Origin: Heptranchias perlo
Taxonomy: Eukaryota
Assembly (NCBI RefSeq): GCF_035084215.1
Contig: NC_090336.1
Location: forward strand, 29,016,001-29,080,000
Direction of reading: 5' to 3'
DNA: 64,000 nt
Under the pieces are notes generated by a model that was not told where the DNA came from, searched no databases, and saw only the letters and a program-made list of their open reading frames with translations. This document shows, piece after piece, positions 267 to 26,559 of the stretch. The translations under genes were made by a program, and so were the position numbers. Numbering within the stretch: the stretch's first letter is position 1; every line of letters begins with the position of its first letter.

Positions 267-578
267 CTTTGAGGGGCAGTTGAATACATCTTTTGAATAC
301 ATCACTTTTGGAATTCTCTTCATACTGAAAGATTAATTCTCTTTCAAAGTCTTCAGCAGTCACTAAAAACATCAGACAACTGTCTATACTGTAAGTGTTT
401 TCAGGGGTAAGCACAGGACCTGAATTTGTCACTCCATCTTTAACGCGATCAGATCCTTTGTACCACTCAACAGTAACATTTTTATGGAGAAGATCGTACA
501 CTGAATGGGACACAGATAAGGGCTCGCCATACACAGGGTTCTTTGGCTCCATTTTGAATTCTGAAAATTTAGGCGAGC
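267..578 (-). CDS. Gene B exon 9: post-TM C1-like domain 5 (both canonical Cys lost); the gene continues left of the window
   Basis: GSPKFS...[20 protein letters not shown]...GVTNSGP. 312 nt, donor AAAG|GTGAG, no stop codon. Confidence 0.87.
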
Positions 579-3500
579 CTATAACATAGAAAATAATATA
601 TTTAATGGATACAAAAAGGCAAGATTAAGCCACATCCTATCTGCCAAGAATTTTTTTAATTCATTCTCTGGATATGGGCGTCGCTGACATGGCCTGCATG
701 TATTGCATATCTCTAGTCACCCTTGAGATGGTGGTGAACCGCTACTGTCCACAGCATGAAGGTACTCCCAACAAAGCTGTTAGGTAGGGAATTCCAGGAT
801 TTTGGCCCAGCTACAATGAAGGAATGGCAATACATGTCCAAGTGACTTGGAGGTGATAGTATTCCCACGCACCTGCTGCCTATGTCCTTCTAGGTGGCGG
901 AGGTCACGTGCTGCCGAACTTGCTGCAGTGCTTCCTGTACATAGTACACAATGCAGCCACAGTACGCCGGTGGTGGAGGGTGTGACTGTTTATGCTGGAT
1001 AGGGTGCCGCCAGCAGACTGCTTTGTCCTGGTTAGTGTTGAGATTCTTGAGTGTACTTGCAACTGTACCCATCCAGGTGAGTGGAGAGTATTCAATCACA
1101 CTCCTGACTTGTAGGTGGTGGAGAGGCTTTGGGGAGTCAGGTGAGCCGCTCACCATAGAATACCCAGCTTCTGACCAGCTCCAGTAGCCATGACACTTGA
1201 GAGTTTCTGGTCAATGGTGACCCCCAGGATATTGATGGTGGGGGATTTAGCGATGGTGATGTCATTGAATGTCAAGATGAGGTGGTTAGATTTCCCCTTC
1301 ATATCCAAAACGTAAATATATCAATGTTTAGTAAGCAGACTTTTCATTGTTGTAGTACTCATTTTCCTCAGCCTGCATAGGCCAAGAGGAAATAGAAAGT
1401 GGCATTTCCACTGTGGTGTAGAGCATTTTGTAAATTTAAAAAATGGCACCCATACAAAAAGTCTTGCCCTGCTGATGTTTGAAATGGTCAGCTCCTAAAA
1501 GTTTCTACTGCACCTCAAATTTAAAGAAAATCTGTATAAATTACAATTTTGTTTAAATTGGCAGATTATTGTATGATTAGACTATTTCTCAACAACACTA
1601 ATTAGGCAGTAAAGATCATAGTGGTAAATTGGGCTATTCTTATTCAGAACAAAGAAAAGTGAAAGTAATATAATTGCACAGTTAAGAAGTTTTAGCATTT
1701 CAAATGTACAGGGCAAGTACAGGGCATTTCACAGGGCAAGTACAGGTCATGCAATTAATTCTGGTTAGTCTCTTGATCTTTGAACAGTTGCCAACAGAAC
1801 TCATTTCATCTTAAGCATACCGTAGCTTGACAAACAGAAAATTTTAAACTCACCTTTAAGAAATAGCTGAAAACATTGCTTAAAAGGTTTGGTTGAAGAT
1901 TTTGAATGACAAACTTCAATTCTGTATTCAGCTTGATGATCATCAGTACTTGGAGTCAAGGTTACTTGGGTGACTTTGTTGTACAGACCATTTTCACAGG
2001 ATGAATCTTCCATAATGTTTCCATGTTTTCCAATCTGGTTCATTTTCACCTCATTTCTGAACCATTCAACTTGAATATCCTCTGGATAAAAGTTACTTAT
2101 AGAACAGGTTAAAGTCAATTCCTTCCCTAGTTCAGGGATGGGAGGATTGCAGATAATTTCAGATACCTTAGGGAAAGATACTGAAATAAAGAGAAACATT
2201 AAGAAAAGCTGAAATACATCTTTCCAAATTTTGTTTCAGATATTGGTACCAAAAGTTCTGTGTAACAAATTATTTTGAATGTATTCAATGTTTGTAAGTT
2301 AATTAGAAAGCACCAAATAAGTGGACTGTTAACATTCATCCCTACATAAGTATACTCACAGAAATGCAAACAAGTCTTAGTATTTTAAACCAATGTTATT
2401 CTCTAAGCTAGAGCTTGTCATTTAAAAAAAATACTCCACAGAAAATAGTTACTTCAGTTTTTCATCACAACTAACTTTTAAGCACCAGAATAACTCAGTA
2501 TGTAAAGGCACAGTGTGGTAAACCATACAGATCAGGAATCCAAGATTCAATTCCATGTATATGCTCAACTACCGCAGGATTGTCACCAGGATTTTGATTA
2601 CATCACCTGGCATTGCACTTGCAAGCTTTTCAAAAATGGGTTAATGTGTGTTTTACCTAATTTTGCTCCCTAATTTCAAACTATGGGAACATACACAATG
2701 CAATAATTTTACTGCTGATGCATTTAGATCTGTCATTCTGTGGCAAAAAAAATTGCATTAATGTAATATAAAATTTACAAACCAAGAACTCCATGCCTGA
2801 TCAGGCATTATTTCCTGAACATCACTGTTCACATTTTTGGGAAATAAGACTTTAATGTCCCATGTGATTTCACTGATACCAGCTCCACTCTGAATATGCC
2901 TAGCAACAATGTAACCCAATTTGTTCCAAACAATTTTGTGTCCCCCCCACCATTATTTTAAGTGTAGCTCTTCAATCTTTAAATTTTCTAAACACTCATG
3001 TGGTCTGGGGAATATAATATCCCATCAATGCTCCACTAACATTAAAATTTAACTGCATATTGATGACCATGGTCAGAATATAACTTGGATCTAGACAAGG
3101 ATCCCCTCTGAACAACTACTTTTAGTGAGAAGTTCGCTCACTGACCTATTTAGGGTACTATTAGGTTTGCCTAACTGTCTGAGGAACTGTAGCATTAGAA
3201 CACATTTAAACTCCAGTAATACTGTTTTGCACACCAGAACCAGCTGACTGCTAATCTTAGCCATCCTGGTGAAAGGTGGCAAAGGATAACAAAATTTTGA
3301 GTGAATACATTTTTATGAAATTAGAACACAATTTAGTTTAGTTATAAACAAAAAGATCTACATTTTTCATATTGCAGAAATGTTTTTAAACTGAGAATAA
3401 ACATACCTAAGTTTTCAGGAATGTATTCTGCAATCCTTGGATACATAAGACTCTCATGTGCAACCTGGCATTTATATTTACTCTGTAGGTCAGATAGTGT

Positions 3501-6500
3501 TGGAATAATTGTACATGAACTGGTAAGTTCATACAACTCATTCTCAGAAATGTGAATTATTTCATCTCTTTCCATAATAGTGTCATTATTTTTGAGCCAT
3601 TGGACAGTAATATTTTTAGGATAAAATGAATGCACTTTGCAGGACAGAGTCAACTCTTCTCCAAGTACCGGGTTCACTGGTTCACATGAGATAGCATTAA
3701 GTGAAGGAAAAGCTGTAAAATATAAAACAGTAGAACATTACTACATACTTACATATATATAGTATATTAGTGATAAACTTTTTCATAACAGTATCTTTTT
3801 TGGTGGTGGATGAAAGAATAATAATGACCTGGACACCCCTGTTCTTTAAAGTAGTTCAATGGGATCTTAAACATCCACCTGAACAAGAAAGGGCCTCAGT
3901 TTAACATCTCATCCAAAGGATGACACCTCCAGCAGTGCAGTACTTATTCTGTACTATACTGAAAGGTCAGCTGGAATGTGAGTTGAATCCACAACATTCA
4001 ACTCCAACTGAGTCAAGGAAAGGAACAGGAAATGGTAAATGTGTGTAAAATATGAAAGGGTGTTCATTAGCAGGGGTAAAAAAAACAATGAGTGTGATGA
4101 CTGATTACATCCTAAAAGTATCTAGCCAATTAGTCAATTTACAACCTGGGGTACAGCTGGGCAGCACTGAATTATAAGTCAGAAAAGCGAGAAAAGAAAA
4201 GGAGGGAAAAAAGGAAAGAAGCCAATTATTGTAATGTAGGAAATGTGGCAGCAAGGCCTCACACACAGCAAGGCGATAATAACCAGATAATGTTTGTAGT
4301 GATGGTGGTAAAATAAATTATAACAATAAGAAAAAGAAGAAAATGCATATTGGAAATAAAAGCAGAAAATGCTAGCAATAACAGGTCTACCAGCATCTGT
4401 AAATATAATTTAGCCAATCTAAAGGGCTGGGGTCAGGTGGCACTGTGACTTAGCACATTATTCTTTCACCTCTGGTACCTGGTCTGAATTCATTCCAAAA
4501 AGATGGGATGAACATTTCCACTTTTTAAATGACGGCTAAGAATCCTACATGATGGAAGCTGGAGCCATCTCAACACAATTTTTAATGGTCTGGAGTCTAT
4601 GGGATAAAACTGCCTGCAAATTGGTAATTTCACTGAGGCCACAGAGATGACTAACTTAGGAAATGATCAAATTTGCAACAGTTGATCACATTTTCACAAC
4701 TAAACACCTGGAAGTGCTTAATGCTGACAACAGATGCTCAGCATGGAAGGTTGCTCTATTCCCAAGCACTGAAATTCTTCATATCAATGCGAACAGAGGA
4801 AAAAAAAACACCAACAAATTTTAAAAGGGACTGAGAAATGTCAAGAACTTTGCATTCAGGTTACCTTTTACTTCCAGTTTGATCTGTTGCTCTGCTGGAT
4901 TTCTCAAACCAATGTGCTGAACTTCACAGAAATATTCACTGTTATCATCTTCTCGGATCGTTGCATTAAAGAGCAACATGCTGCAGACGCTGTGAGAGTG
5001 GTCAGGAGAACTAAACTCACTCATACTGTGGGAATATTTTTCTGGATAGGAATTCTCTTCAGCTACATTGTTGTGTTTCAACACAGGATGTTTAATTCCA
5101 TTCATTATTTTATACCAGGTGACCGTTAAAGGACGTGGCTTGAAAACATTTATCGGACAAGTCAGCATCACTGTATTGTTATGATGCACAACTGGGGGTC
5201 TAATTATGTTAGCCAATTTAGGAGCAACTAAAGGGGGAAAAAAAAAAACACAAAACATTCAGTTTTAATTACACACAACTTCTGAAGATAAATGTTATTG
5301 ATTTATCTTTTATCATACATTACTCACAAAATGAAAGGTCATTATCTATACATGTACTAAACAAACAATGTTGTGTCTCCATTAATCTTAAGCCATTTCA
5401 GTTCTCTTTGACAACCATGCAAGTGGTCTGTTCCCTATCCTACTTCCTCCACCCCAACCCATGTTGCAGCTTTAGTTTCTCTTTCATCTGTAGCAATACC
5501 CAGACATGCCAGTAGTGCAGCTCCAAATTCAGGACAGGTATAACAAAGATAATCTCACCCAAGACAGAGTTAGGAACATAGCAACAGAAGTAGGGCATTC
5601 AGCCCCTCGAGCCTGTTCCACCATTCAATTAGATCATGGCTTAACTTCATCTACCGTCCTCGGTTCAGTAACCCTTAATACCCTTGCCTAACAAAAATCT
5701 ATCAATCTCAGTTTTGAAATTTTCAATTGACCTAGCCTCAATTGCTTTTTGGGGGGGTGGGGGGAGGGGGGTGGGAAAGAGTTCCAGAGAGAGTTACATC
5801 CCAGCCCCTATCCCTCCAAACTCAGGCTCTCTCTTTCATAAATAGGGACAAATATCCATTTTTACAGCTATTAGTGGGTCAGAGCCCCACCTCCGGCTCC
5901 AGGTCAGTGAGAGGAATAGGAGATTGTGAGAGTGAAGTAGTGGAGGGAGAGAGGGGAGACACAGATGCAAGGGGACACTTATAATAGCTCATTTGCATTA
6001 TTTGTATAAGGAGGCACCGTGAGCAGATGATCAGATCAGAAAAATAACCTAATTTTCCTCTTTACAAATACCCCAACAATCCATTATTGAATTGTTTTTT
6101 TCCTAACCCATCAATGAAAAACGTTCTTTTTATTTACGGCAAAAGTCAAAGCTGAGAGATTTCAGAATGGAAGTTTTGCCCAATTCAAGAACTGAAGCCA
6201 CAGAACCAGGCCTGGTAGGCTACGATGAAGCAAAATAGCCTTTATCCGATCCGAAATGACACCAATGTCCTTGTGGAGAAGGCGAATAGGTCAGTGGGGA
6301 GAACATAATATGTTTGGGGGGGGGGGGGAACTAGGCTTGATATTAGGGAGGGACAGCAGGATTAATGAAACTGTAGGAGTAGAAGCAGAAGGCTTAGTTG
6401 ATATAGCAAGAAAATATTACAAGAAAAAGGGAAAGAGAGGGGCTTTGGGATAATGCAAGGTAAAAGCACCATTGTACAAGAGACAAAAGATACCAAAAAC

Positions 6501-9500
6501 TAATTGAGAAAACTAGGAAAAAGAATAAAGCTCCATTATCTAAAAAAATTGGAATCAGGATTGATATGTAGGTAAATGGACATTGCATTCAAAACAAATT
6601 GAAGTGCTAGATGCACTAGTAGCTATAAAGGACATGATATAGTAGCTATAATTGAGACATAACTTAGGTTTGGACAAAATTGATAACTTAATAGTCCTGG
6701 TTTAATATTTTCAGGAGAGATGGAGAGGGGAAAAGGGGGCAGTATTAATAAAGTATTCTATCCCAGTGCTAAAATGTAAGAATGTTCTAAAGGGTTAGGC
6801 TAAGACAGAATTTATATGGATGAAGTTAAGGAAAGAATGGGAAATGGTACAATCTTGCTGTAGTTGTAGGCCACCAAATAGTGGAGAGAAGATACAGGAG
6901 GAAATATGTAGAGAGGTGAAAGAACAACTGGACAATATTATTGGGATGATTTTAAGTTAGGAAACAAGACCACAGATCAGCTGTGAAGATTGTTCAAATG
7001 TGAGATGAATGGAGTACAAAATGTATTTGTATCAGGCAAAAAAGGATGCATCAAAGAATAGAGATTGTAAAAAGGAGGCATGTGATAAAACTAAGGCTAA
7101 GAAAATCATGAGAAATATAGAAAGTATAGTGAGGTGAAAAGGATAGAAGGGCCAAAAGAGAATATGAAAAATGGTTACAATATAGACATCCTTACTATTT
7201 CTTTTTAATATGGATATTGGAAGTAAAATAATTCAAGAGTAGGACCTCTCTGGGATGAAGAAAGAAATCTAATTATGAAAGACGATATTAAATAGATCAT
7301 TTGTCAATTTATTTTTTAAATGATGGAGGAAGTAAGAATTCAGTTATATTCGAGAAGCACGTGAAACAATTGTTGGGGATTAATTGTAGAAAAGAAATTT
7401 GTGCTGAAAAGGTTAGCAAAACTCAAGACCTGCATCCTGAACTCTGATCACAATTTTTCAATCTTTCTTAAACATGCAAATTGTGCCAAGGTACCTGACA
7501 GCAGCTGTTCGAGAAGGATAAAGCAGGTAACTATAGACTAATCAGTAGTGGACAAACTTTTAGAATCCATAATTTGTGATTAAATTAACCAGCATTTAGA
7601 GATGCAGAGGATAATCAAGGACAACCAGCGGGATTTGTTAAAGGCAAGTCTTGTTTGACAATTTAATAGTGTTTTTTTTTAAAAATGGTGACGGATTGTA
7701 TAAAGGGAATTCATTAGATGTACTGTATATGGATTTTTCAGAAAGAGTTTGATAAGGTTTCTAACAAGACGCTGGTTACAGAACTTCAGGTATATAGAAG
7801 AGGAAATGTAGCAGAAGGCTGGGTGACTAACAGCAATCAAGGGTCAGGGTTAATGGGTGTTGCTCAGATTGGAGAAGGGTTGTAAGTGATATATCCCAGG
7901 GGTCAGTGCTGCTTCCATTTTTGTTCTCACGATTATGAGTGTGTGAATGTGAGCGGAACTGTAAGCAGGAGCCACTTTTTTGTTGATCCATGAGCAACAC
8001 CATAGAATATCAAAGTTATTCTAAACATGACCAACCCTTGAATTAATACCATGTTTTGTAAATCAGCCAAGAAAACTGCCATGAGGTATCACTGAGCTAT
8101 GAGAATGGGTCTCTTGACACAATAAGCTTCTGTTTATTCTTGAAAGAGTAAATGAACATATCTGAAGAAAAAAATCCATCTATGCCACAAATAGGTGAAT
8201 TAAACATCATGCTTCCCCCCACCCATGAAAATAACACAATAGAAAAATTACTCAAACATCATACATATTATTAAAAAACCTGTACATTTACTGCCCTTCT
8301 GTGCTAGTATTTCATGCTTTCTAACTGCCAGCTAGATGGAGCTTGGGGGCAGATACTTTGTAAAGAATCCCTTCTTCCATGATATTACAAACAGGAAATA
8401 CTCTATCCTCACTTGTGTCATTACAAGAAAGACAATTCATCATGTTACTGATGGAAGAAATTCTACAGAAATACGATTCTGCAAGCCAAAAAACACTAGT
8501 GAAATTTGAAGGAACCTTGCTTTATACCATTTATGCAGTGACTTTGCATAAAAGACACTCTTTTAAGCTACCTTCAGTTCTCTGCTGGATTGCTGTAATT
8601 TCTTCCCACTCCCTCTGCATTCTTTCACATCCTACAGTTCTGGTTCCAGATATGTTCTAGCCTATTGGTCCTTTGTTGAACAGTTCAGTACCACTGTGCC
8701 CTCTCCATTTTTCCCTTCAACATTTCTTCATCACACAGCTTTTATCCTAAATTAGTAACCATATCATTTAAAAGCACTCACTCAGAATTGTAGATAGGGG
8801 ATTTTACTACAATGGATTTAATTTTAACAAGTCATCCATGAGAGGGAGGCAAAATATGTCAAGAGGCCCATTCTCAAATAGCTCAATGATACTTTAAGGC
8901 AACTTTCAGCCACAGAAGCATCAATTTGCGAATGTCTTTTGGATGGAGCAGGTGGTATATTATACTGTTCAAAGTGGATATCCATGAATGCCATGAGAAA
9001 ACCTGAGGGCCACAATACCATAAAGTACTCATTTGAAAACTTATGATTGTTAGTTCTAGTGGACATGACTTGGGGTTGCAACATTTAATGAGTGCAATCA
9101 AGAAGTGGCAGTGAAGATTATTGATGTGATCAATCTGAACACACAGCGTCCACACATTCTACCTAACAGAACGGCGACTTCTGATAGACTTATAAAAAGC
9201 TTACTTCCATCAACTTGTAAAGAGATGCTTCTGAAGGTGTCCTCACTGCAGGCTGGATGCATCACTTCACATGTGATTATTGCTTGATTATCCTCATTGA
9301 TGTCAGGATAAACCGCAAGAATGCTAGAAACGCTGAATGTTCCATCATCATTTTTCTGGAAACTGCCCAACTTGACTTTCCATTGACACTCAGCATGAAT
9401 CCTTTTTGCAGTCTCATCTTTTTTCCTGTCAGTGACGAAAGGTATATGGATCATGTAGTCTGTATGCCATTCACCAATCAATTTCTTTTCAGAGTCCTTC

Positions 9501-12500
9501 ACCCTCTTCAAATACCAGGTGATAGTAATGACATCAGGTCGGAATCCAGACACTTGACACGTAAACTCTGCAAGTTCTTGGTGTACAATTCGGGCAGGTA
9601 TTTGAATGTCTGATACTTTTGGTGCAACTGGGAATAAAAGAAAATTTAAAGAAATTTCAAGTTGGATTGTTCCAAATTATCTTTGACGCTTCCTGAAAAT
9701 TCCAATCATTTGGTATATCTAGTCTTCACTGATTGTGAAATACATATTAAAAAAACCTGTACATTTACACAAAGAATGCTCCCAAAACGCTCGTCATCGG
9801 AACAACTCAGCAGGTACAAAGACCCTACTTGAGGATCTTCATGTTAGCAGAATGATTTACATTTTGGAAATAAGCATTAAATAATTGAATATAAGCTTAT
9901 CATTTCCCTCTTTGAAAAGGTGGAGTATTTTGAATTAACAATTACACCCTTTGGAGTTTCTTTCCCTTGTAAACGTTCACCCAGTCCACTAAGTTCCAGA
10001 ATATACTAAGTAATTGTCATCAGCAACACTGGTACCAGATCAAAGATTCAAATACAGTAAGACAGTACAAGGGTTAGAGTAACAGTAACACACTGTAGCT
10101 GCAAACAGCAAATTAATAAGGAGTTTATGAAGGTACAAAGATTCTAAGCAGAAAGTTTATGAAAATTATCCATCAAAATACAAAACACAAATAAAATACA
10201 CTTCACGATTAGACATTTCATACTTAGTTTGCATCTCAATTAAGCACTCGTTAGCAGACTAATCATTTATGTTTAAAAACACTACAGATTGGTGCTGTTA
10301 CAACTTGATGCAAAAAAAATCAAGCAATTGTAGCAGATTTGGTGCAGTATTAGTTAACCAGAATATACAAGAATTTGCTGGAACAGCAGAAACTATGCTG
10401 CAGTAAGAGTTATTATTGCCCCCCTCCCCACCCCCATAACCTAAATTTCCTTTGTCATTTCACTCCAAGTTTATCCCCTAATCTGTCCGAAGTAGCACAC
10501 GTAGAATTGTAGGTTTACCTTTAAAGTAGAACCGCATGTAGAAGAAAATCCCCACTGCTATTAATGCAACAGAAATAATAATGCTTGCAAAGATGCTTCC
10601 AACTATTGATCCTGTGGACAGACGAATTTCTGCTTCTGTAAAAAAAAGTTACATATTTCTCATACTGGATTTTAAAAAAATGGTTCCACAACTCACCAGT
10701 GTAAAACCGTATAATAAGAGTAAAGTATACCAGAGAAATACTTAGCACAGCTCTGGACCAGCCAAATCAGGGAAAGTGCTCATAAATAACAGGCATTTGT
10801 TTTCACACATCTGAGTGTCCCATATTGTCTGCAACCCAGTTGTGTTATTTGGAAAACTGGCTATTGCACCTATAATGACTGAAAATCCAGTGTCTACTGG
10901 GACTTACATGTCATTGAAAATTTGTGTCAAAATGAAAAATTTGTCTATAGCAGCATTGTGTGTGTCTTTGGCAAGCAGCAGAGGGTAATCGCTTGCAACT
11001 ACAATATGGATGCAATTGCCAAACAAGTAGAAAGCACTGTTAGCCATGTGCTCAGGGTTTTTTTTAAATTTCGTTCCTGGGATGTGGGCGTCGCTGGCAA
11101 GGCCAGCATTTATTGCAAATCCCTAATTGCCCTCGAGAAGGTGGTGGCGAGCCGCCATCTTGAACCGCTGCAGTCCGTGTGGTGAAGTTCTCCCACAGTG
11201 CTGTTAGGTAGGGAGTTCCAGGATTTTGACCCAGCGACGATGAAGGAACAGCGATATATTTCCGAGTCGGGATGGTGTGAGACTTGGAGGGGAACGTGCA
11301 GGTGATGTTGTTCCCGTGTGCCTGCTGCCTTTGTCCTTCTAGGTGGTAGAGGTCGTGGGTTTGGGAGGTGCTGTCAAAGCCTTGGCGAGTTGCTGCAGTG
11401 CATCCTGTGGATGGTACACACCACAGCCACAGTGCGCCGGTGAAGGGAGTGAATGTTTAGGGTGGTGGATGGGATGCCAATCAAGCGGGATGTTTTGTCC
11501 TGGATGGTGTCGAGCTTCTTGGGTGTTGTTGGAGCTGCATTCATCCAGGCAAGTGGAGAGTATTCCATCACACTCCTGACTAGTGCCTTGCAGATGGCAC
11601 GAATGTTACTTGCCAGTTATCAGCCCAAGCCTGGATGTTGTCCAGGTCTTGATGCACGCGGGCACGGACTACTTCATTATCTGAGGGGTTGCAAATGGAA
11701 CTGAATACTGTGCGATCATCAGCGAACATCCCCATTTCTGACCTTATGATGGAGGGAAGGTCATTGATGAAGCAGCTGAAGGTGGTTGGGCCTAGGACAC
11801 TGCCCTGAGGAACTCCTGCAGCAACGTCCTGGGGCTGAGATGATTGACCTCCAACAACCATTACCATCTTCCTTTGCGCTAGGTATGACTCCAGCCACTG
11901 GAGAGTTTTCCCCCTGATTCCCATTGACTTCAATTTTACTAGGGCTCCTTGGTGCCACACTCGGTCAAATGCTGCCTTGATGTCAAGGGCAGTCACTCTC
12001 ACCTCACCTCTGGAATTCAGCTCGTTTGGACCAAGGCTGTAATGAGGTCTGGAGCAGAGTGGTCCTGGCGGAACCCAAACTGAGCATCGGTGAGCAGGTT
12101 ATTGGTGAGTAAGTGCCGCTTGATAGCACTGTCGACGACACCTTCCATCACTTTGCTGATGATTGAGAGTAAACTGATGGGGCAGTAATTGGCCGGATTG
12201 GATTTGCCCTGCTTTATGTGGACAGGACATACCTGGACAATTTTCCACACTGTTGGGTAGAGGCCAGTGTTGTAGCTGTACTGGAACAGTTTGGCTGGAG
12301 GTGCGGCTAGTTCTGGAGCACAAGTCTTCAGCACTACAGCCGAGATGTTGTCGGGGCCCCTTAACCTTTGCTATATCCAGTGCACTCAGCCGTTTCTTGA
12401 CATCACGTGGAGTGAATCGAATTGGCTGAAGACTGGCTTTTCCGATGGTGGGGATATCGGGAGGAGGCCGAGATGGATCATCCACTCGGCACTTCTGGCT

Positions 12501-15500: not shown

Positions 15501-18500
15501 TCACAATATACATGTACTCTAATTTACTCGCACCTGTCAGAAGGAGTTAATAGAGTTTTGTATCGACACCAATTTAAAATGTTTTATAAAAATACATCAG
15601 ATTAATAAACACAAAGAAAATTCAAAAGGCCTTGCTTGTCTGTATATAACGAATCCATATAAAAGCTTCATATTTAATTGTTTTCCCTATAAAAATTAAA
15701 ACTACAATACACCAGTTAGCACTGGAGTGCTTTTCAATACAAACTTAGTCAGAAAGTTTTATACTTTGCATTTTAATAAAAAGCTAAGACCACCACAACT
15801 TACCTTTCAAAGTCACTAAAGCATTCACAGAGTATGGCTCTGAAAAAGTCTTGTGTGTCACTTGGCATGTGAAAGTGCTGTCAATGTCTTCTACACCAGG
15901 CTCCAATCTAACTTCAGTGGTTACATTACATGTTCCATCAGGGTTTTTGACTGGCGGGGCAATGCATACATCAGTTAATCGTTTTGTTTCTCCTTGTGAT
16001 GGGGTTGATTGAAACCATTCAGCATTGCTCTCGCAAGGATAATATCTACTTAACTGACAACCCAAGGCCATCTCTCCACCAATGCCAACTTCCACAATTT
16101 TTTCTGAAACCACAGTCACTGTGGGGCGTGCTGCCAAAACAAAAGGTACATTAACCTCACTAATAACAGTGGCTATTAATCAAAAGTAATTCATTGGATA
16201 TGGCATTCTGAGGAAACGAAAGGGTTATAAGTGAGTTCTTTCTTTCTTGATACAGTACAACATTTAAATTCAAGAGAACTTTGACTGCTGATGTGCAGGT
16301 TTTTAATCTATTTATTTATTCATGAAAAAATGAAAAGGCTTTAACAGATAATTGCTGATCATATTTAACAGTAGTTAAGTGTTAATATACCACATTTATC
16401 CAGGGGCAACAATGTGCTTATTTGAGGCATGTGTCACCTCTTCAATCAAGCACAGGTTTGTGTTTTATTTGCCTTTGTAAATACTGCCATACACAGTTGA
16501 CACTTCCAATTTGGTTAACTTTTACATCTAGTTCTTGATTCAACTAATTAGTGATATACCTTACACTTTTTAAAAAAAACATACTTGATGATTTAATACC
16601 ACCATGTATCACCTCATATTTGTCACTGTTAAATACATAAAAGAACCTGACTGGGGATAGATCTGGCTACACTGTGAAGTTTACATTGATCTTATTTTAT
16701 TCTTTCATCTCTAGTTCATTGCATATGCTGTATGCAAGGACTTTGATTGGCGGGGCGATGCATGTCTCAGTTAGCCGTTTGCAGTCTAAGAAACTCCTGC
16801 ATTTGTACAAACAGGTTATGCAAAAATTTGATTAATCAAGTGACTTGTTTTATTGTAGAAATGTTTCTTTTTTTTTCTCTCTATCACTCCATTTTTATAA
16901 TTTGTAGCAGATAGAGAAATCTATAAACCTGGATGGCTTCCTAGAAGTGTTAAGAGAAAGTCCTAACTGAAGGTGAGCTCTGCAAAGCTGTCTGAAAATT
17001 GAAAGACATTTCTTGGTTATTGTATCAGCTATAGTGTGCCAGAAGGATTAGATGATCACAGTGTGTAAATGAAGGTAAAGAAAAATTGCTGTTAGAATCA
17101 TCTTCTATTTGTGTTAGGATGAAAGCGGTTAGAATGCTTTTCAAAGTTTAATTTTAATGATACAGCACTTAATGGTCAGCTTCAGCTGAATACTTTATGT
17201 CCCACTAACTCAACCGCCTTACTGAATCAACTACTTTCAACAAGTCCTTTCAGTGATCAACTTAATGAGATTTTACTGTGAGTCATAGATGAATAAAATG
17301 TTTCAAGATCTGAATGAGGATTGTTAGTTTGTGTGACAACTTCTACTCACATGTACTATTGGATCATTAATAAAATCAGGCCAGAAAGCATTGGACAATA
17401 GGTGCAAACCATTTTATATTTAAGGGCATTTCCTTTGCAAGATTTTACATAGAAGTACATAGAATGTACAGAACAGAAATAGTCCATTCAGCCCAACAGG
17501 TCCAGGCCGGTGTTTATGCTCCACACAAGCCTCCTCCCTACTTCATCTAACCCTATCAGCATATCCTTCTGTTCCTTTCTCCCTCATGTGTTTATCTAGC
17601 GTCCCCTTAAATGCATTTATGCTAGTCGCCTCAACTACTCCTTGTGGTAGCAAGTTCCACATTCTAACCACTCTCTGGGTGAAGAAGTTTCTCCTGAATT
17701 CCCTATTGGATTTATTAGTGACTATCTTATATTTATGGCCCCTAGTTCTGGTCTCCCCCACAAGTGGAAACATCTTCTCTACATCTGCCCTATCAAAGCC
17801 TTTCATAATCTTAAAGACCAGAACTGTTCACAGTACTCCAAGTGTGGTCTAACCAAGGTCCTATACAAGTTTAACATAACTTCTCTGCTTTTCAATTCTA
17901 TCCCTCTAGAAATGAACCCCAGTCCTTGGTTTGCTTTTTTTTTTAATTGGCCTTATTAACCTGCGTCGCTACTTGTAGTGATTTATATATCTGTGCCCCC
18001 AGATCCCTCTGCTCCAATACCTCATTTAGACTCTTATTATTCCAAGCAGTATGTGGCCCTCTTATTCTTCTTACCAAAATGTAATACCTCACACTTCTCC
18101 AAATTGAATTTTATTAGCCAATTACATGCCCATTCTGCATGTTTATTAATGACTTAAAGTATTTTGTTGCAGTCCTCCTCAGTATTAATTATACCCCCCA
18201 ATTTGGTGTCATCTGCAAATTTTGAAATTGTACTTCTGATTCCCGAGTCCATTGGAAATGGTGAACAACAGTGGCCCCAGCACCGATCCTTGTGGAACAC
18301 CACTTCCCACCTTTTGCCAGTCTGAGTAACTACCTTTAACTCTACTCTCTATTTTCTAGCCAGCTCGCTATTCATTCTACTTGTCCTGACTCCACATGCT
18401 CTGACCTTAGTCATGAGTCGACTGTGCTGTACCTTATCGAACGCCTTTTCAAAATCCAAATATATTACATCTACTGCATTACCCTTGTCTACTCTTTGAT

Positions 18501-21500
18501 ACTTCTTCAAGGAATTCAATAAGGTTGGTCAAGCATGACCTTCCTTTTTGAAATCTGTGCTGACTATTCTTTATTATATTTTCGGTTTGAAGATGTTTTT
18601 CTATTACATCTTTGAGTAAGGATTCCATTATCTTTCCTACCACTGACATTAAGCTAATTGGTCTATAATTCCCTGGACTGGTTCTATCACCCTTTTTAAA
18701 TACAGGAATCACATTAGCTGTCCGCCAGTCCTCTAGCATTATTCCCTGTTCTAATGAATATTATAAAAAATTATGTAATGTGTATGTAATAGTGCCTCTG
18801 CTATCTCTCTAACTTCTTTTAGCATTGTGGAAGCAATCTATCAGAACCATTTTATTTTTTATTTTCATAGACAGACAAACCATTATGACATATGAACACT
18901 GATGGCATTGTGTAACACTGCAGTGTAATAGTTTATAGTAGTTGTTCATAAATCAGCTTACCTAAAACTTCAAGCTTTACCGCCTTAGAGGCCGTATCAT
19001 CTGGTGGAATAACAACTTCACATTGATACTGTCCAGCGTGTTTAAATGTGACACTTTTTAGCAACAGTGACATGTTTCCCTTTAGAATGGAGTCTTCTGA
19101 CAGTTCTGCTTCTTTCCACAAATTACTTATTACTCCATTACTGAAGACAAAGACTTTTGATTTTTCAGTGTCACTAGTGAAAGACCACAAAACGCCCAAG
19201 TTCTCTGCAGTCAGCATAGCCCCAGTGAGTTCAGCAATTTCACACTGTATAAGTCCATTTTCATTAACCATTACTTCCACAGGATTTTGACTCACTCTCA
19301 ACTCCAATTTTGTTTCTGCAGATTAAATAAAACATAATTAGTGTCCACCATACAAGGTTGTGCCTATATTAACCTCAACTTACATAGAATGTACAGCACA
19401 GAAATAGGTCAGTTGGTCCAACTGGTCCATGCTGGTGTTTAAGCTCCCACCCTTCACCGAACCCTTTCTGCATAACCTTCTATTCCTTTCTCCCTCATGT
19501 GTTTATCTAGCTTCCCCTTTATCTAACTTCACCATTAACTGGTTCTGATAAAAGGTCACTGATCTGAAATGTTGGAGGTGATTTTAAACCCCAAGAACGG
19601 GTGGGTTGGGGGCAGGTGGGAGATGAAAATAGTTGTTTTTTTGGGTCGCAACCGCAAAATTTTCGGACTTTGCATTCCCAGTGGGAAACCTGTACTTTTA
19701 GGCGCCAACATTAAACCCCGAAATAAAGCCAGGTTGCGGTCGTGACCCAAAAAACAACTATTTTCAACTCCCACCCACCCCCAACCCACCCGTTCTTGGG
19801 GTTTAAAATCACCCCTGTTAACTCTTTCTCTACAGATGCTGCCTGACCTGCTGAGTGTTTCCATCATTTTAGGTTTTTATTTCACCATTAACTGTCTCAT
19901 TAATTAATCTTCTCTCCCTCCCCACCAAAAACTAGCTAAGGGAACACAATATAATCTACCCAAAGTGGCGAGCTTAGCACATCATGCCCATCCATTTGTA
20001 GTTTCACTTTTTCAATCAACTGTTTTTCAGTACACTTTTTGTAGTATCTGACAGTAGCAATTAAATCGTTAAGACATCTGCTTGTTAAATATATTGTTCC
20101 ACATACAAATATAGGTTAGAGACCTCCAAAAAAAATCTATTTTTCTGTCAGTTTTCTCCCCTCCCATCTCCTAAAGGCAGAATCCTTGATGGAATGTGCT
20201 TCCAATACCTCAGCCAAATGGTCATTAATTCACACGTAAGCCAAAAGAGAAAATTTCAATAGGAGGAGGGAAACATTGCAACTGTGCAATATTTTGGGTA
20301 TCTTCTCACCAAGTTTCTCCCCTCCTTTCTTCTCTCCTAAAAGTGAGTCCTTGCTCAGCCAGTTCCAGACACCAGCTGGAAGTAAACTACTAGTCGCTAC
20401 TAGAAGTGACTACTATTTACTAGAGACCTGCGAGCCTCAACAGTGAGCGTCAGCAGGGCACTGTGGACATCACAGCTAAGCCTGATCCCGTCCTTACCCG
20501 ACATTCACACAAGTAAGATTCCAGCGACACCAATCTGCAAAGAGAATGCTTGTCAATTCCACCTTTTCTAACTCCCAGTGCTGAAGCCAAAAGTACCATC
20601 CTATTACCACACCTCCCGGGATAAGCTAATGGTGTAGACTGAGGACCAACCCTGGGATCTTCCTGGTCTGAACAGCTCACTCGATTACTGGTGAAACTCT
20701 TTGAACCAACAATCCTCCATGACTAAAGTTACATTAGGGCAGCCCAAGCCTCCCTTTGCCAATTCAAATCCATTCATTAAATACCATGATGTCTTGACTG
20801 ATGTGCAAATATTTACATTTAATGTGTAATAATTTACATTTATCAATGTTTTAATTTGTCATTTTTTGACTATTTGCATAGTTAGTCTAATCATTCTGTG
20901 GGAACTCTGGCTGTTTTCCTCCACAAACCCTGACACAACTGTAGCAGCTTAACCTTAATCCTAGCAGGGATTGGCTAATTTGGCACCGATTGAGATCAAA
21001 TATAATCAATAACTAGAACGATACCCAGACTTCAAGGGTTAAGTCACGAGGAGAGATTACACAAATTGGGGTTGTATTCTCTAGAGTTTCGAAGGTTAAG
21101 GGGTGATCTGATCGAAGTTTATAAGATATTAAGGGGAACAGATAGGGTGGATAGAGAGAAACTATTTCCGCTGGTTGGGGATTCTAGGAGTAGGGGGCAG
21201 AGTCTAAAAATTAGAGCCAGACCTTTCAGGAGCGAGATTAGAAAACATTTCTACACACAGAGGGTGGTAGAAGTTTGGAACTCTCTTCCGCAAACGGCAA
21301 TTGATACTAGCTCAATTGCTAAATTTAAATCTGAGATAGATAGCTTTTTGGCAACCAAACGTATTAAGGGATATGGGCCAAAGGTAGGTATATGGAGCTA
21401 GATCACAGATCAGCCATGATCTTATCAAATGCCAGAGCAGGCACGAGGGGCTGAATAGCCTACTCCTGTTCCTATGTTGCTAATATGAGACCTTGCTGCT

Positions 21501-24500: not shown

Positions 24501-25090
24501 AGAGACGGGGCGTGAGCGGGCTCCTCACTTACTACCTCAGCCCGCCTCCGCACGGCTGCTTCAATTTAATCTTCAACCTCCACAATCGACAAACAGCCAA
24601 AGTACAACTGGGCCCAAAGGGCGGGTCCCGGTCCCAGCCCGGGCTCCAGCACCAGGCTGGTCGAAAGGCCGTTCCGCTCCCCGCCCCGCCCCGCCCCGGT
24701 CCCAGCCCGGGCTCCAGCACCAGGCTCAGGCTGGTCGAAAGGCCGTTCCGCTCCCCGCCCCGCCCCCAGCCCGGGCTCCAGCCCCAGGCTCAGGCTGGTC
24801 GAAAGGCCGTTCCGCTCCCCGCCCCGCCCCGGTCCCAGCCCGGGCTCCAGCCCCAGGCTCAGGCTGGTCGAAAGGCCGTTCCGCTCCCCGCCCCGCCCCG
24901 GTCCCAGCCCGGGCTCCAGCCCCAGGCTCAGGCTGGTCGAAAGGCCGTTCCGCTCCCCGCCCCGCCCCGCCCCGCCCGCCCCGGCCCGGCCCGGCCATCA
25001 ATTTCGCACTTTACCTGAAAGCGGCGGCACCACCACGAGCAGCAGCACCACCCGCACCAGGAGCGGCAGCGAGTTCCTCAGCTGTCCCAT
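267..25090 (-). CDS. NCR3LG1-like: Gene B (3'-incomplete): B7-H6/NCR3LG1-like type I membrane protein, SP-V-C1-TM-(C1)x5+. Exons 25015-25090, 18962-19315, 15804-16130, 10519-10635, 9205-9627, 4865-5227, 3407-3712, 1854-2180, 267-578 (about 868 codons in the window)
   Basis: Nine exons with GT/AG boundaries, all phase-1 introns, and every internal exon a multiple of 3, giving one open frame. The V and C1 motifs resemble human B7-H6 as recalled (GxxW, VFxF, GxxSLxL, AGxYxCEVV.PP; PxxKNxDGTxNVT). Orthology is not tested. Confidence 0.85.
652..1298 (-). mobile_element. Older 3' fragment of the same LINE family
   Basis: [14 protein letters not shown] and LHHRRTVAA motifs with a matching tail. Confidence 0.8.
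1854..2180 (-). CDS. Gene B exon 8: post-TM C1-type domain 4 (F-strand Cys replaced)
   Basis: VSFPKV...[17 protein letters not shown]...EYRIEVCH. 327 nt. Confidence 0.9.
3407..3712 (-). CDS. Gene B exon 7: post-TM C1-type domain 3
   Basis: AFPSL...[19 protein letters not shown]...[10 protein letters not shown]. 306 nt. Confidence 0.9.
3828..4015 (-). mobile_element. Deu-domain SINE remnant (SacSINE1/AmnSINE1-like)
   Basis: The reverse complement resembles the recalled Deu core (GTACTG..CTGCACTG..GGAGGTG..TTTGGATGAGATGTTAAAC.GAGGCCC..CAGGTGGATG..AAGATCCCA). Confidence 0.6.
4865..5227 (-). CDS. Gene B exon 6: post-TM C1-type domain 2
   Basis: IAPKL...[18 protein letters not shown]...YFCEVQH. 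363 nt, GT/AG flanks. Confidence 0.9.
6600..7925 (+). mobile_element. Old, heavily decayed CR1
   Basis: Remnant nucleotide matches to CR1 motifs (ggcaagtcttgtttgac, gtatatggattttt, cccaggggtcagtgct). Confidence 0.65.
9205..9627 (-). CDS. Gene B exon 5: post-TM C1-type domain 1 (long internal loop)
   Basis: VAPKVS...[10 protein letters not shown]...ITW...[10 protein letters not shown]...ITCEVMH. Acceptor ttttattcccag, donor GGAA|GTAAG, 423 nt. Confidence 0.9.
10519..10635 (-). CDS. Gene B exon 4: transmembrane exon [39 protein letters not shown]
   Basis: Acceptor ttttttttacag, donor AAAG|GTAAAC, 117 nt, phase 1-1. About 23 uncharged hydrophobic residues followed by R/K (positive-inside rule). 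Not shown in this frame in the ORF track. Confidence 0.87.
11058..12655 (-). mobile_element. 5'-truncated copy of the same LINE family (intron 3 of gene B)
   Basis: RT ORFs 11580-12002 and 12017-12334 are nearly identical to 28590-29231, and the 3' tail is the same. Confidence 0.9.
13227..14162. repeat. Tandem duplication, 2 x 468 bp, apparently identical
   Basis: Identical ORFs at 13284-13487 and 13752-13955 (offset 468). Units are 13227-13694 and 13695-14162. Confidence 0.95.
15804..16130 (-). CDS. Gene B exon 3: extracellular Ig C1-type domain
   Basis: [10 protein letters not shown]...W...[13 protein letters not shown]...FTCQVTH. Acceptor ttttggcag, donor G|GTAAG, 327 nt. Confidence 0.92.
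17450..18840 (-). mobile_element. CR1 3' fragment with internal deletions (intron 2 of gene B)
   Basis: [16 protein letters not shown] and [11 protein letters not shown] motifs. Confidence 0.85.
18962..19315 (-). CDS. Gene B exon 2: Ig V-set domain (B7-H6-like)
   Basis: LIQC...GVLW...[10 protein letters not shown]...[12 protein letters not shown]...VKLEVL. Acceptor tctgcag, donor G|GTAAG, 354 nt. Confidence 0.92.
19574..19815. mobile_element. MITE-like element, about 242 bp, with ~75-bp terminal inverted repeats
   Basis: GAGGTGATTTTAAACCCCAAGAACGGGTGGGTTGGGG ... CCCCAACCCACCCGTTCTTGGGGTTTAAAATCACCCC, flanked by duplicated (T)GTT. Confidence 0.85.
21012..21476 (+). mobile_element. CR1 3' end
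   Basis: ORF 21066-21401 ([19 protein letters not shown]...WNSLP) followed by the 3' UTR. Confidence 0.85.
21838..21932. repeat. 15-bp minisatellite (GGAGAATAAAGAGAG) x about 6
   Basis: Direct reading of the sequence. Confidence 0.9.
22000..23630 (+). mobile_element. Rearranged L2-clade LINE fragments
   Basis: [31 protein letters not shown] and LHWIPV motifs. Confidence 0.8.
23838..24347. mobile_element. Penelope-like non-autonomous insertion with an inverted ~50-bp repeat and a 14-bp TSD
   Basis: TSD acaactttcacaag at 23824-23837 and 24348-24361. 23872-23923 is the reverse complement of about 24300-24351. Hammerhead-like core at 24262-24300. The family assignment is an inference. Confidence 0.65.
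24626..24990. repeat. GC-rich minisatellite, about 5 x 69 bp (64-74 bp), in intron 1 of gene B
   Basis: The anchor TCGAAAGGCC recurs at 24661, 24735, 24799, 24868 and 24937. Confidence 0.92.
25015..25090 (-). CDS. Gene B exon 1: signal peptide [25 protein letters not shown]
   Basis: Strong Kozak context GCCATGG inside a CpG island, a hydrophobic core, and a donor CAG|GTAAAG in phase 1 that matches the phase of the V exon. Confidence 0.85.
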
Positions 25091-25356
25091 GGCCCCGGCC
25101 CCGGCCCCGAGCTCGCTCCGTCTTTCCTCCCTCCCTCCCTCTCTCTCTCTCTCTCTGTGACCGGGGACGGACGGACGGACGATCCGCCTCCTCCCGCCCC
25201 GAGTTTCACTTTCGTCGCCGCCAGCGAGAGGGAGGGAGCCGGGATTGCGCGCGCATCCACCGGTTACCCGCCACTACCGCGGGAGGGCGCTGCCAACAAG
25301 CGATAAATTGACACTTCCTTGAGGAGAGGCATCAAAGGTGGGGGATTTCATCAACA

Positions 25357-26283
25357 TGGGGATGGGGGGGTATGGGGGATGGGGGGGTATGGGGGATGGG
25401 GGGGTATGGGGGATGGGGGGGGATGGGGGGGGATGGGGGGGGATGGGGGGGTATGGGGGGGTATGGGGGGGGATGGGGGGGTATGGGGGGGTATGGGGTA
25501 TGGGGGGGTATGGGGGATGGGGGGGTGTGGGGGATGGGGATGGGGGGGGGATGGGGATGGGGGGGGGATGGGGATGGGGGGGGGTGGGGGGTGGGATGGG
25601 GGGGGGGGGGATGGGGGGGGGTGGGGGGGTATGGGATGGGGGGGGGGGATGGGGATGGGGGGGTATGGGGGATGGGGTGGGGTATGGGGGATGGGGGATG
25701 GGGTGGGGTATGGGGGGGGGGGGTGGGGGGTGGGGGATGGGGGGGGGATGGGGGGGGGGGTATGGGGTGGGGGATGGGGGGGGTATGGGGTATGGGGTGG
25801 GGGATGGGGGGGGGGTATGGGGTATGGGGTGGGGGATGGGGGGGGGGTATGGGGTATGGGGTGGGGGATGGGGGGGTATGGGGTATGGGGTGGGGGATGG
25901 GGGGGGGTATGGGGTATGGGGTGGGGGATGGGGGGGGGGTATGGGGTATGGGGTGGGGGATGGGGGGGGGATATGGGGGGTGGGGATGGGGGGGGGGTAT
26001 GGGGGGGGATATGGGGTATGGGATGGGGGGGTATGGGGTGGGGGATGGGGGGGTATGGGGTGGGGGATGGGGGAGATGGGGTATGGGGTGGGTGATGGGG
26101 ATGGGGGGATATGGGGTATGGGGTGGGTGATGGGGATGGGGGATATGGGGTATGGGGTGGGTGATGGGGATGGGGGATATGGGGTATGGGATGGGGATGG
26201 GGGAGATGGGGGGATATGGGGTTGGGGATGGGGGAGATGGGGATGGGTGGGATGGGGAGTGGGGGGGGAGTGGGGGGGTGATG
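25357..26283 (+). repeat. G-rich low-complexity tract (Gn-AT / Gn-T / Gn-TAT)
   Basis: About 930 bp of G3-G12 runs separated by 1-3 nt. Confidence 0.95.
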
Positions 26284-26559
26284 ATAACAGCAGATTTGAA
26301 AAGGAGGGTGACAGTATCAGAGGAGAGGGAATCATAGGTATACTAAATATAAATATGTTTGATGATCTTTCTGTGCTGATTTCATACTGACTGAAAATTT
26401 ACAAATCTGTTAGTAAATTTAAGATTTTTTTTGGAAACATTTTGCTGCTTATTTTCTTCTGCTGTTAATGAAAACCAGTATGGATTTGGAAAAGACCAGT
26501 CACTTTCTGACAACTTTAAAATAGCTCTTTCAGGAAATAGAGTGTATTAATAAATGAGA

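What the first reader, a model, noticed from the sequence alone, without database searches (positions are those of the whole stretch)
267..25090. B7-H6-like membrane protein with a tandem array of Ig C1 domains on the cytoplasmic side
Seen: the splice-consistent model is signal peptide, V, C1, single TM exon, then at least 5 further C1-type exons (CxxxxF[YRK]P...W...xxCxVxH pattern). No second hydrophobic exon was found. The TM is followed by R/K, which indicates type I orientation, so at least about 580 residues of Ig domains would face the cytosol. Established: C1-set domains are typical of extracellular or luminal immune proteins (Ig, TCR, MHC, beta2m, tapasin, SIRP), while known cytosolic Ig arrays such as titin are mostly I-set. 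Human B7-H6, the NKp30 ligand, has a V+C ectodomain and an unrelated tail. Inference: a B7-family ligand/receptor that has redeployed C1 exons as an intracellular scaffold or signalling rod. I know of no functional description of this, although automated annotations may already list such proteins.
Basis: partly seen in the sequence, partly recalled or inferred. Interest (0 to 1): 0.93.

Follow-up and report, generated by a model that had tools for sequence, protein, structure and literature searches.

The report
B7-like protein with intracellular Ig tail
A shark gene, copied into spliced RNA and conserved from sharks to alligators, encodes a B7-type cell-surface protein whose membrane anchor is followed by six antibody-constant-type (C1) Ig domains that should lie inside the cell, a place where I know of no report of this domain type.

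Summary
On the minus strand lie nine clean phase-1 exons: leader, V, C1, a 117-nt TM exon, then five further C1-set exons. The gene runs off the window's low end, and one more C1 exon is expected there.

- **RNA:** spliced contigs from four runs of one sample join TM>C1b>C1c exactly at 10519>9627 and 9205>5227. Contig lengths fit the full leader-to-C1g message.
- **Conservation:** the same V-C1-TM-(C1)n order occurs in 84 of 150 homologue clusters. The 30 clusters I named come from sharks, rays, chimaera, bichir, coelacanth, lungfish, frogs, a caecilian and alligator. They are annotated "uncharacterized" or "NCR3LG1".
- **Domain type:** all C exons score as Pfam C1-set, far above I-set. V and C1a match B7-H3 and B7-H6 best.
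- **Topology signals, for:** K/R are enriched on the C-side of the TM. Sequons are enriched only before the TM. The canonical Cys pair is kept in 82% of pre-TM domains but 50% of post-TM domains.
- **Topology signals, against:** annotated isoforms in three other species skip exactly the TM exon, which would give a secreted all-Ig form. Two post-TM domains keep their cysteines in at least 90% of sequences.

Topology and function are untested. I found no paper describing this.

The parts
25015..25090 (-). Leader exon. ATG at 25090. Encodes signal peptide [25 protein letters not shown] plus 1 base. Donor is G|GTAAAG.
   Evidence: Found by a scan for ATG, a hydrophobic core and a phase-1 donor. 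It resembles the N-terminus of orthologue P0002. Splice context.
18962..19315 (-). V-set Ig exon, 354 nt, phase 1-1. This is the B7-like V domain and has one NMS sequon.
   Evidence: Pfam V-set 6.3e-8. Best PDB matches are CD276 at 3.9e-11 and B7-H6 at 6e-6. 69% identical to P0002. Splice sites.
15804..16130 (-). C1a: extracellular C1-set exon, 327 nt, phase 1-1. Both canonical Cys are present. One NVT sequon.
   Evidence: Pfam C1-set 5.9e-6. Best PDB match is B7-H6 at 5.7e-8. 86% identical to P0002. Splice sites.
10519..10635 (-). Transmembrane exon, 117 nt, phase 1-1, so it can be skipped in frame. Encodes [38 protein letters not shown].
   Evidence: Translation. Hydropathy 2.64 over 19 residues. 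Present in the spliced RNA contigs of four runs and joined to 9627. Splice sites.
9205..9627 (-). C1b: first post-TM C1-set exon, 423 nt. It carries a charged insert of about 40 aa. It starts about 6 residues after the TM.
   Evidence: Pfam C1-set 4.9e-8. Contig piece 9205-9627 is joined on both sides. The insert is disordered in the AF2 model of orthologue P0002, residues 347-368.
4865..5227 (-). C1c: second post-TM C1-set exon, 363 nt. It carries the family signature LTCPIxxFKPRPLxxTW and KYSHxxSE.
   Evidence: Pfam C1-set 7.4e-7. Contig piece 4865-5227 is joined to 9205. As a query it found 181 related clusters. Family consensus.
3407..3712 (-). C1d: third post-TM C1-set exon, 306 nt. Both Cys are present.
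   Evidence: Pfam C1-set 9.1e-14. Best PDB matches are SIRP-alpha d2 at 3.8e-15, IgA, beta-2-microglobulin and MHC-I alpha3. Splice sites.
1854..2180 (-). C1e: fourth post-TM C1-set exon, 327 nt. The F-strand Cys is replaced by Ile.
   Evidence: Pfam C1-set 6.9e-14. Cys columns. Splice sites.
267..578 (-). C1f: fifth post-TM C1-set exon, 312 nt. Both canonical Cys are lost (H and F). The donor at 267 leads out of the window to an expected last exon, C1g.
   Evidence: Pfam C1-set 1.5e-4 at 22.5 bits, above the 21-bit cut-off. Cys columns. Residues 879-969 of P0002 have no match in this gene within the window.

Best explanation
This is one transcribed gene of an old jawed-vertebrate family, and it encodes a type I membrane glycoprotein.

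**Outside the cell.** A cleavable signal peptide leads a B7-H3/B7-H6-like V-C1 ectodomain out of the cell. By homology, that ectodomain is a ligand for an NKp30/CD28-type receptor on another cell (inferred).

**Membrane.** A strongly hydrophobic stop-transfer helix, followed by K/R, anchors the protein.

**Inside the cell.** The rest of the chain stays in the cytosol as a beads-on-a-string rod that ends right after the last domain. It has six C1-set Ig domains: five in the window and one beyond it. I take the rod to be a cytosolic scaffold or adaptor that couples ligand engagement to the cell interior, or reports the cell interior to the ectodomain as the B30.2 tail of butyrophilins does. This step is inferred and untested.

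**Second product.** The TM exon is 117 nt and phase 1-1, so skipping it keeps the frame. That would give a secreted V-(C1)7 form as a second product of the same gene. This is seen only in annotated isoforms of other species.
For: **Shown**
- The exon structure is clean, and all exons are open and in phase.
- Spliced contigs of 2.4-3.2 kb in four runs join TM>C1b>C1c with 0 mismatches. Three of the four end 1377-1389 nt after C1c, which fits C1d-C1g plus a short 3'UTR.
- Every C exon scores as C1-set.
- V and C1a match B7-H3 and B7-H6 best.
- 84 of 150 homologue clusters have the order C1-TM-C1C1... Only 2 have a C-terminal TM.
- Members occur in Pristiophorus, Pristis, Heterodontus, Hemitrygon, Callorhinchus, Erpetoichthys, Latimeria, Protopterus, many frogs, Microcaecilia and Alligator.
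- The orthologue P0002 aligns exon by exon at 56-86% identity. The post-TM exons (56-75%) are about as conserved as V (69%).
- The AF2 model of P0002 folds all eight Ig domains at pLDDT of about 80-95, including those without a Cys pair, plus one helix at residues 271-287.

**Indirect signals of topology, over 55 family representatives**

| Signal | Before / N-side of the TM | After / C-side of the TM |
|---|---|---|
| K+R in 15-residue TM flanks | 97 | 191 |
| D+E in 15-residue TM flanks | 119 | 45 |
| N-X-S/T sequons, observed/expected | 1.64 | 1.08 |
| Canonical Cys pair kept | 54/66 domains | 159/317 domains |

- The Cys-pair difference gives Fisher p = 1.3e-6, while the core Trp is kept in 95% of post-TM domains.
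- In a 26-protein alignment the four ectodomain Cys are invariant.
- In this window C1e and C1f lack the pair, as do 4 of 6 domains of the neighbouring paralogue.
Against: - There is no protein-level or topology experiment.
- The RNA evidence is assembled contigs from one sample. Their library type is only guessed to be RNA, although the GT..AG joints show splicing. Contigs hide minor isoforms.
- TM-exon-skipped isoforms are annotated in three other species. In those forms the same domains would be secreted.
- The Cys pairs of C1c and C1d are kept in at least 90% of full-length members. That is hard to explain in a purely reducing compartment.
- Family members without a TM in their gene model also lack about half of the Cys pairs. 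Cys loss alone therefore does not prove a cytosolic life.
- In this particular gene, sequon density is the same before and after the TM (2 in 227 aa against 5 in 577 aa).
- No recognisable signalling motif or partner was found.
- SignalP and DeepTMHMM were not available. The hydropathy and charge counts are my own heuristics.
Confidence: 0.6

Rival explanations
1. The biologically important product is the secreted, TM-skipped isoform: a long soluble V-(C1)7 molecule, comparable to a non-rearranging Ig-like protein. The TM-containing isoform only tethers V-C1 to the surface. Its post-TM array is then translated baggage without a cytosolic function, and may be degraded.
For: - Isoform pairs in Microcaecilia, Bombina and Hemitrygon differ by exactly the 34-38-aa TM block.
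- The TM exon here is 117 nt and phase 1-1, so it can be skipped in frame.
- The C1c and C1d Cys pairs are kept in at least 90% of members.
- Frog models with a signal peptide and no TM exist, such as P0005 and P0010.
Against: - The only form assembled in all four runs here contains the TM exon.
- The TM exon has kept the same internal position from sharks to alligator, and 84 of 150 clusters carry it.
- If the array worked only outside the cell, near-universal Cys pairs and sequon enrichment would be expected, as in the ectodomain. Instead 50% of pairs are lost and sequons sit at chance.
Confidence: 0.22
2. The post-TM array is extracellular or luminal after all. This would need a second membrane pass, or an unconventional orientation with an uncleaved leader and the internal helix acting as a reverse signal-anchor.
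For: - I know of C1-set domains only from extracellular or luminal proteins (established knowledge).
- The gene's last exon is outside the window.
Against: - No second hydrophobic exon lies on the minus strand.
- 54 of 55 family members have a single internal TM, and most end 0-10 residues after the last Ig domain.
- The orthologue P0002 ends in a plain C1 domain.
- The positive charge lies on the C-side of the helix.
- A typical signal peptide is present.
Confidence: 0.05
3. These are two adjacent genes, a V-C1-TM B7-like gene and a separate C1-array gene, merged by the reader or by a chimeric contig.
For: - Tandem paralogues and many phase-1 Ig exons make mis-joining easy.
- A contig across two genes does not prove a single transcript (caveat printed).
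Against: - The TM>C1b joint uses canonical GT..AG sites, is in frame, and is identical in four runs.
- No leader exon precedes C1b.
- Independent gene models in more than 12 species have the same continuous order.
- The intron 9628-10518 has zero contig depth.
Confidence: 0.03

Closest known systems
B7-H6 (NCR3LG1) and B7-H3 (CD276)
   Same: Both have a signal peptide, a V-set domain, a C domain and a single TM, with one domain per phase-1 exon. They are the best solved sequence matches for V (CD276 4e-11, B7-H6 6e-6) and for C1a (B7-H6 6e-8). NCBI names some frog members NCR3LG1.
   Different: Human B7-H6 has a non-Ig tail, described as gag-like (my knowledge). B7-H3 has a short tail. Neither has Ig domains after the TM. 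Orthology and NKp30 binding were not tested.
Butyrophilins (V-C-TM-B30.2)
   Same: They are B7-related ectodomains joined through one TM to a folded cytosolic domain that gives the molecule an intracellular function. This is an analogy in design.
   Different: The cytosolic module here is an array of C1-set Ig domains, not B30.2/SPRY. No such Pfam hit was found.
SIRP-alpha, UrIg/UrIg2 and Ig heavy chains (V followed by several C1-set domains)
   Same: All have V plus a tandem C1-set array. SIRP-alpha d2 is the best solved match of C1d at 3.8e-15, and UrIg2 also matches. UrIg2 has VJ plus nine C1 domains plus a TM (PMC12227049).
   Different: In all of these the TM, if present, follows the whole array, so every C1 domain is extracellular. 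Here the TM sits after the first C1 domain. The V domain here has no J-like FGxG motif.
Titin, obscurin and myosin-binding protein C (cytosolic Ig arrays)
   Same: They are long cytosolic strings of Ig-fold domains that often lack the disulfide.
   Different: Those are I-set domains in proteins without a signal peptide or TM. Here C1-set scores 200-289 bits against 36-57 bits for I-set.

Membership tests
B7 family (B7-H3/B7-H6 branch) | N-terminal V-set plus C-type Ig ectodomain, one domain per phase-1 exon, then a TM | tested here: met
   Pfam V-set and C1-set on separate phase 1-1 exons, with the TM exon next.
B7 family (B7-H3/B7-H6 branch) | Closest sequence relatives among characterised proteins are B7 members | tested here: met
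   PDB phmmer: V matches CD276 at 3.9e-11 and NCR3LG1 at 6.4e-6. C1a matches NCR3LG1 at 5.7e-8, ahead of Ig light chains.
B7-H6 (NCR3LG1) orthologue | Groups with NCR3LG1 in a V/C phylogeny and shares synteny | not tested
B7-H6 (NCR3LG1) orthologue | Binds NKp30 | not testable with these tools
   Needs a binding assay.
Ig C1-set domain (PF07654) | Scores above the Pfam gathering threshold and better than I-set, C2-set or V-set | tested here: met
   All six C exons score 22.5-52.4 bits against a 21-bit cut-off. Whole relatives score 200-289 bits for C1-set against 36-57 for I-set.
Ig C1-set domain (PF07654) | Canonical B-F disulfide pair and core Trp | tested here: inconclusive
   Trp is kept in 95% of post-TM domains. 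The Cys pair is kept in only 50% of post-TM domains, against 82% of pre-TM domains. Here C1b-C1d keep it, and C1e and C1f do not.
Type I single-pass membrane protein | Cleavable signal peptide, one hydrophobic helix, positive charge on the C-side | tested here: met
   Leader. One segment with hydropathy of 2.2 or more inside the gene. K+R are 97 on the N-side and 191 on the C-side over 55 members. These are heuristics only; SignalP and DeepTMHMM were not available.
Type I single-pass membrane protein | C-terminus shown experimentally to be in the cytosol | not testable with these tools
   Needs protease protection, glycosylation mapping or tag accessibility.
Membrane Ig, UrIg or SIRP type (array outside, TM last) | TM follows all Ig domains | tested here: not met
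   The TM lies between C1a and C1b. Only 2 of 150 related clusters have a C-terminal TM.
Butyrophilin | B30.2/SPRY domain in the tail | tested here: not met
   No SPRY or PRY hit in P0002, P0011, P0012 or P0016.
Titin-type cytosolic Ig array | I-set domains, with no signal peptide or TM | tested here: not met
   I-set scores are far below C1-set. A signal peptide and a TM are present.

The most novel reading that the evidence does not exclude
C1-set Ig domains, which as far as I know have been described only in extracellular or luminal immune molecules of jawed vertebrates, work inside the cytosol as the conserved tail of a B7-H6/B7-H3-like surface ligand. This architecture would date to the gnathostome ancestor, be kept in cartilaginous fish, basal bony fish, amphibians and crocodilians, and be absent from human B7-H6, whose tail is not made of Ig domains. 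The array would act as an intracellular sensor or scaffold linked to NK/T-cell recognition. The same gene could also release it as a secreted Ig-like rod by skipping one exon.
Probability: 0.5. Interest if true: 0.9.

Novelty: new variant of a known kind. Interest (0 to 1): 0.8.

Why it matters
The C1-set domain is a hallmark of the adaptive immune system (Ig, TCR, MHC, beta-2-microglobulin, tapasin, SIRP). To my knowledge it has only been described in oxidising extracellular or luminal compartments.

A large family that places six or more C1 domains behind a membrane anchor, conserved across the deepest split among living jawed vertebrates, would widen what this fold is known to do. It would also give a new kind of B7-family tail to compare with the B30.2 tail of butyrophilins. 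And it would bear on what the tail of B7-H6-like ligands looked like before mammals.

The question is directly testable. Full-length sequences already sit unnoticed in the Xenopus, coelacanth, elephant-shark and alligator annotations, and simple topology and redox assays would settle it.

Tried and rejected
- **Second TM.** A hydropathy scan of all minus-strand frames found only repeat-derived or stop-flanked stretches besides the TM exon. Rejected.
- **More C1 exons.** A profile of the 12 C1 exons searched against all 938 open frames of the window found no further C1 exon.
- **Separate leader for C1b.** The only hydrophobic stretch in the TM-C1b intron, at 10227, has no usable donor, and that intron has zero contig depth. 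Rejected.
- **Homodimer of C1c-C1d of P0002.** Complex prediction gave 'no answer' with a score of 0.00. This is neither for nor against binding.
- **Rfam scan of the window.** No match.
- **Literature.** Six full-text searches found no description of C1 or Ig domains in a B7 or B7H6 cytoplasmic tail. The two papers most likely to mention it are not held, so prior description cannot be excluded. They are Flajnik et al. 2012 in Immunogenetics and Ohta & Flajnik 2015 in Immunol Rev.
- **TM-less family members as a secreted control.** They also lack about half of the Cys pairs, so they cannot serve as a control.
- **Joined protein.** Exons were searched one by one by reference, and database orthologues such as P0002 stood in for the full length.
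Full report
**What is in the sequence**

The minus strand of 267-25090 holds nine open exons. All have polypyrimidine/AG acceptors and GTAAG- or GTGAG-type donors.

| Exon | Coordinates | Length / note |
|---|---|---|
| leader | 25015-25090 | [25 protein letters not shown] |
| V | 18962-19315 | |
| C1a | 15804-16130 | |
| TM | 10519-10635 | 117 nt; [38 protein letters not shown] |
| C1b | 9205-9627 | |
| C1c | 4865-5227 | |
| C1d | 3407-3712 | |
| C1e | 1854-2180 | |
| C1f | 267-578 | |

Every Ig exon and the TM exon is phase 1-1 with a length divisible by three. The V exon hits Pfam V-set, and each C exon hits C1-set PF07654 above the gathering score. The last donor, at 267, points out of the window, so the gene is cut by the window's low end. 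The window has no N.

**Transcription**

The one search for sequencing runs returned four runs of a single sample whose library type is only guessed. I laid them on 4801-10800, the largest stretch allowed that contains the critical junction.

- Each run gave one contig of 2395-3165 nt. It covers 10519-10637, 9205-9627 and 4865-5227 with no mismatch and skips the two introns at GT..AG boundaries. The material is therefore spliced RNA, and the TM exon is joined in frame to the downstream C1 exons.
- The introns have no depth apart from repeats.
- The TM exon begins 818-883 nt from the 5' end of the contigs. Leader+V+C1a need 757 nt, which leaves a 5'UTR of 60-125 nt.
- In three runs, 1377-1389 nt follow C1c. 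C1d+C1e+C1f need 945 nt, which leaves about 430 nt for one more C1 exon, a stop and a short 3'UTR.
- The junction 15804>10635 itself lay outside the laid stretch and rests on this arithmetic only.
- Contigs cannot show minor isoforms.

**Is there a second membrane pass?**

A hydropathy scan of the minus strand found no other credible TM exon. A profile of the C1 exons found no additional C1 exon in the window.

The window also holds the 3' part of an upstream paralogue with six C1 exons, within about 46413-60329 on the minus strand. Its last exon ends in TAA directly in front of a vestigial GT donor.

The sawshark protein P0002 (969 aa) aligns exon by exon to the gene at 56-86% identity. It continues for one more C1 domain (residues 879-969) and then stops. 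The sawfish protein P0011 does the same for the paralogue. So the array ends in a plain Ig domain without a further hydrophobic segment.

**The family**

A HMMER search of 1.84 billion cluster representatives with the C1c exon gave 181 hits.

- Of the best 150, 84 show the order C1-TM-C1-C1..., with 1 to 14 post-TM domains and V in front. Only two have a conventional C-terminal TM.
- Named members come from Pristiophorus, Pristis, Heterodontus, Hemitrygon, Callorhinchus, Erpetoichthys, Latimeria, Protopterus, many frogs including Xenopus laevis, Microcaecilia and Alligator sinensis.
- They are called 'uncharacterized protein', 'Ig-like domain-containing protein', 'hemicentin-1-like' or 'natural cytotoxicity triggering receptor 3 ligand 1'.
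- In whole proteins C1-set scores 200-289 bits and I-set 36-57 bits.
- The post-TM domain C1d matches SIRP-alpha d2, IgA, beta-2-microglobulin and MHC-I alpha3 best.
- V matches CD276 and B7-H6 best, and C1a matches B7-H6 best.
- An AlphaFold2 model of P0002 built with a 26-member alignment has mean pLDDT 83. It shows eight confident Ig domains, including those lacking the Cys pair. It also shows one helix at residues 271-287 and a disordered insert in C1b.

**Which side of the membrane?**

This was not measured. The sequence signals that bear on it are the following.

1. A typical signal peptide and a single, very hydrophobic helix are present.
2. Over 55 representatives, the 15 residues before the helix carry 97 K/R and 119 D/E. 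The 15 residues after it carry 191 K/R and 45 D/E.
3. N-X-S/T sequons are 1.64-fold over shuffled expectation before the TM and 1.08-fold after it.
4. The canonical B-F cysteine pair is present in 54/66 pre-TM C1 domains and in 159/317 post-TM domains (Fisher p = 1.3e-6). It is usually replaced by L or V, while the core Trp stays at 95%.
5. In the 26-protein alignment the four ectodomain cysteines are invariant.
6. In this window C1e and C1f have lost the pair, and so have four of the six paralogue domains.

All of this fits a type I protein whose array lives in a reducing, non-glycosylating compartment.

**Points that cut the other way**

- NCBI isoform pairs in Microcaecilia, Bombina and Hemitrygon differ by exactly the TM block of 34-38 residues. 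The exon here can likewise be skipped in frame. A secreted V-(C1)n isoform therefore probably exists in the family.
- The Cys pairs of C1c and C1d are kept in at least 90% of full-length members.
- TM-less gene models also lack half of their pairs.
- In this one gene, sequon density does not differ across the TM.

The array may therefore live in two compartments. Which product carries the function is open.

**Mechanism I commit to (confidence 0.6)**

The protein is a B7-H3/H6-like surface ligand whose tail is a cytosolic rod of six C1-set domains, acting as a scaffold or adaptor. A secreted isoform arises by TM-exon skipping.

- The gene model, the TM>C1 splice, the domain types and the conservation are shown.
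- The topology is inferred from sequence statistics.
- The receptor and the tail's function are inferred by analogy with B7-H6/NKp30 and butyrophilin/B30.2.
- A homodimer test of C1c-C1d gave no verdict.

**Novelty**

The proteins are in public annotations but unnamed. Six full-text searches found nothing on Ig or C1 domains in a B7 cytoplasmic tail. The nearest described architecture, UrIg2, has its TM after all nine C1 domains. Two key papers on B7H6 evolution are not held, so an earlier mention cannot be excluded.

Unchecked first-reader notes on this genome report a further paralogue about 31 kb beyond the window's end and the same post-TM loss of cysteines. I used them only as leads.

**Limits**

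Exons were handled one by one by reference.
- The species is coded. The nearest orthologue found is from a sawshark.

Noticed in passing
window 46413-60329, minus strand: This is the 3' part of a second, upstream paralogue. Six C1-set exons lie at about 59898-60329, 57650-58030, 55220-55531, 52136-52459, 48198-48509 and 46413-46726. They are collinear with residues 292-977 of Pristis pectinata P0011 at 51-66% identity. Its V, C1a and TM exons must lie beyond the window's high end. The last exon ends in TAA immediately before a vestigial GTAAAT donor. Four of the six domains lack one canonical Cys.
   Followed up: partly
window 10480-10518, minus strand: Reading through the TM exon donor gives only 13 more codons ([13 protein letters not shown]) and a stop, so intron retention would make a short-tailed V-C1-TM protein. 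The contigs show no depth in this intron, so there is no sign that it is used.
   Followed up: partly
window 5592-5733: A short interspersed repeat in the C1b-C1c intron collects very high summed contig depth in the RNA runs (up to about 86,000, against 70-300 for the gene's exons) and many loose ends. It has no Rfam match. It is probably an abundant SINE-like element transcribed from many loci.
   Followed up: partly
window 24481-26390: A GC-rich (64%) low-complexity repeat block lies directly upstream of and over the leader exon. It gives long spurious ORFs on both strands, rich in Pro/His or Gly/Trp. It may be a CpG-island-like promoter region or a microsatellite expansion.
   Followed up: no
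window 11580-12725 (-), 27210-29765 (+), 40806-43067 (+), 61204-62868 (-): These are retrotransposon (reverse-transcriptase) fragments in introns and between the two paralogues. The copy at 61204-62868 keeps an uninterrupted 554-aa ORF.
   Followed up: no
window 4865-5227 (C1c) and family alignment A1: C1c carries the most conserved motifs of the whole protein family, LTCPIxGFKPRPLxITW and KYxHxxSE. It keeps its Cys pair in 46 of 55 representatives, unlike its neighbours. It is a candidate interaction site.
   Followed up: partly
same genome, about 31 kb beyond the window's high end (earlier notes s1-882556, s1-882582): Unchecked first-reader notes describe another B7-H6-like gene with seven post-TM C1 domains and post-TM loss of the disulfide. 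This suggests a tandem cluster of at least three paralogues.
   Followed up: no
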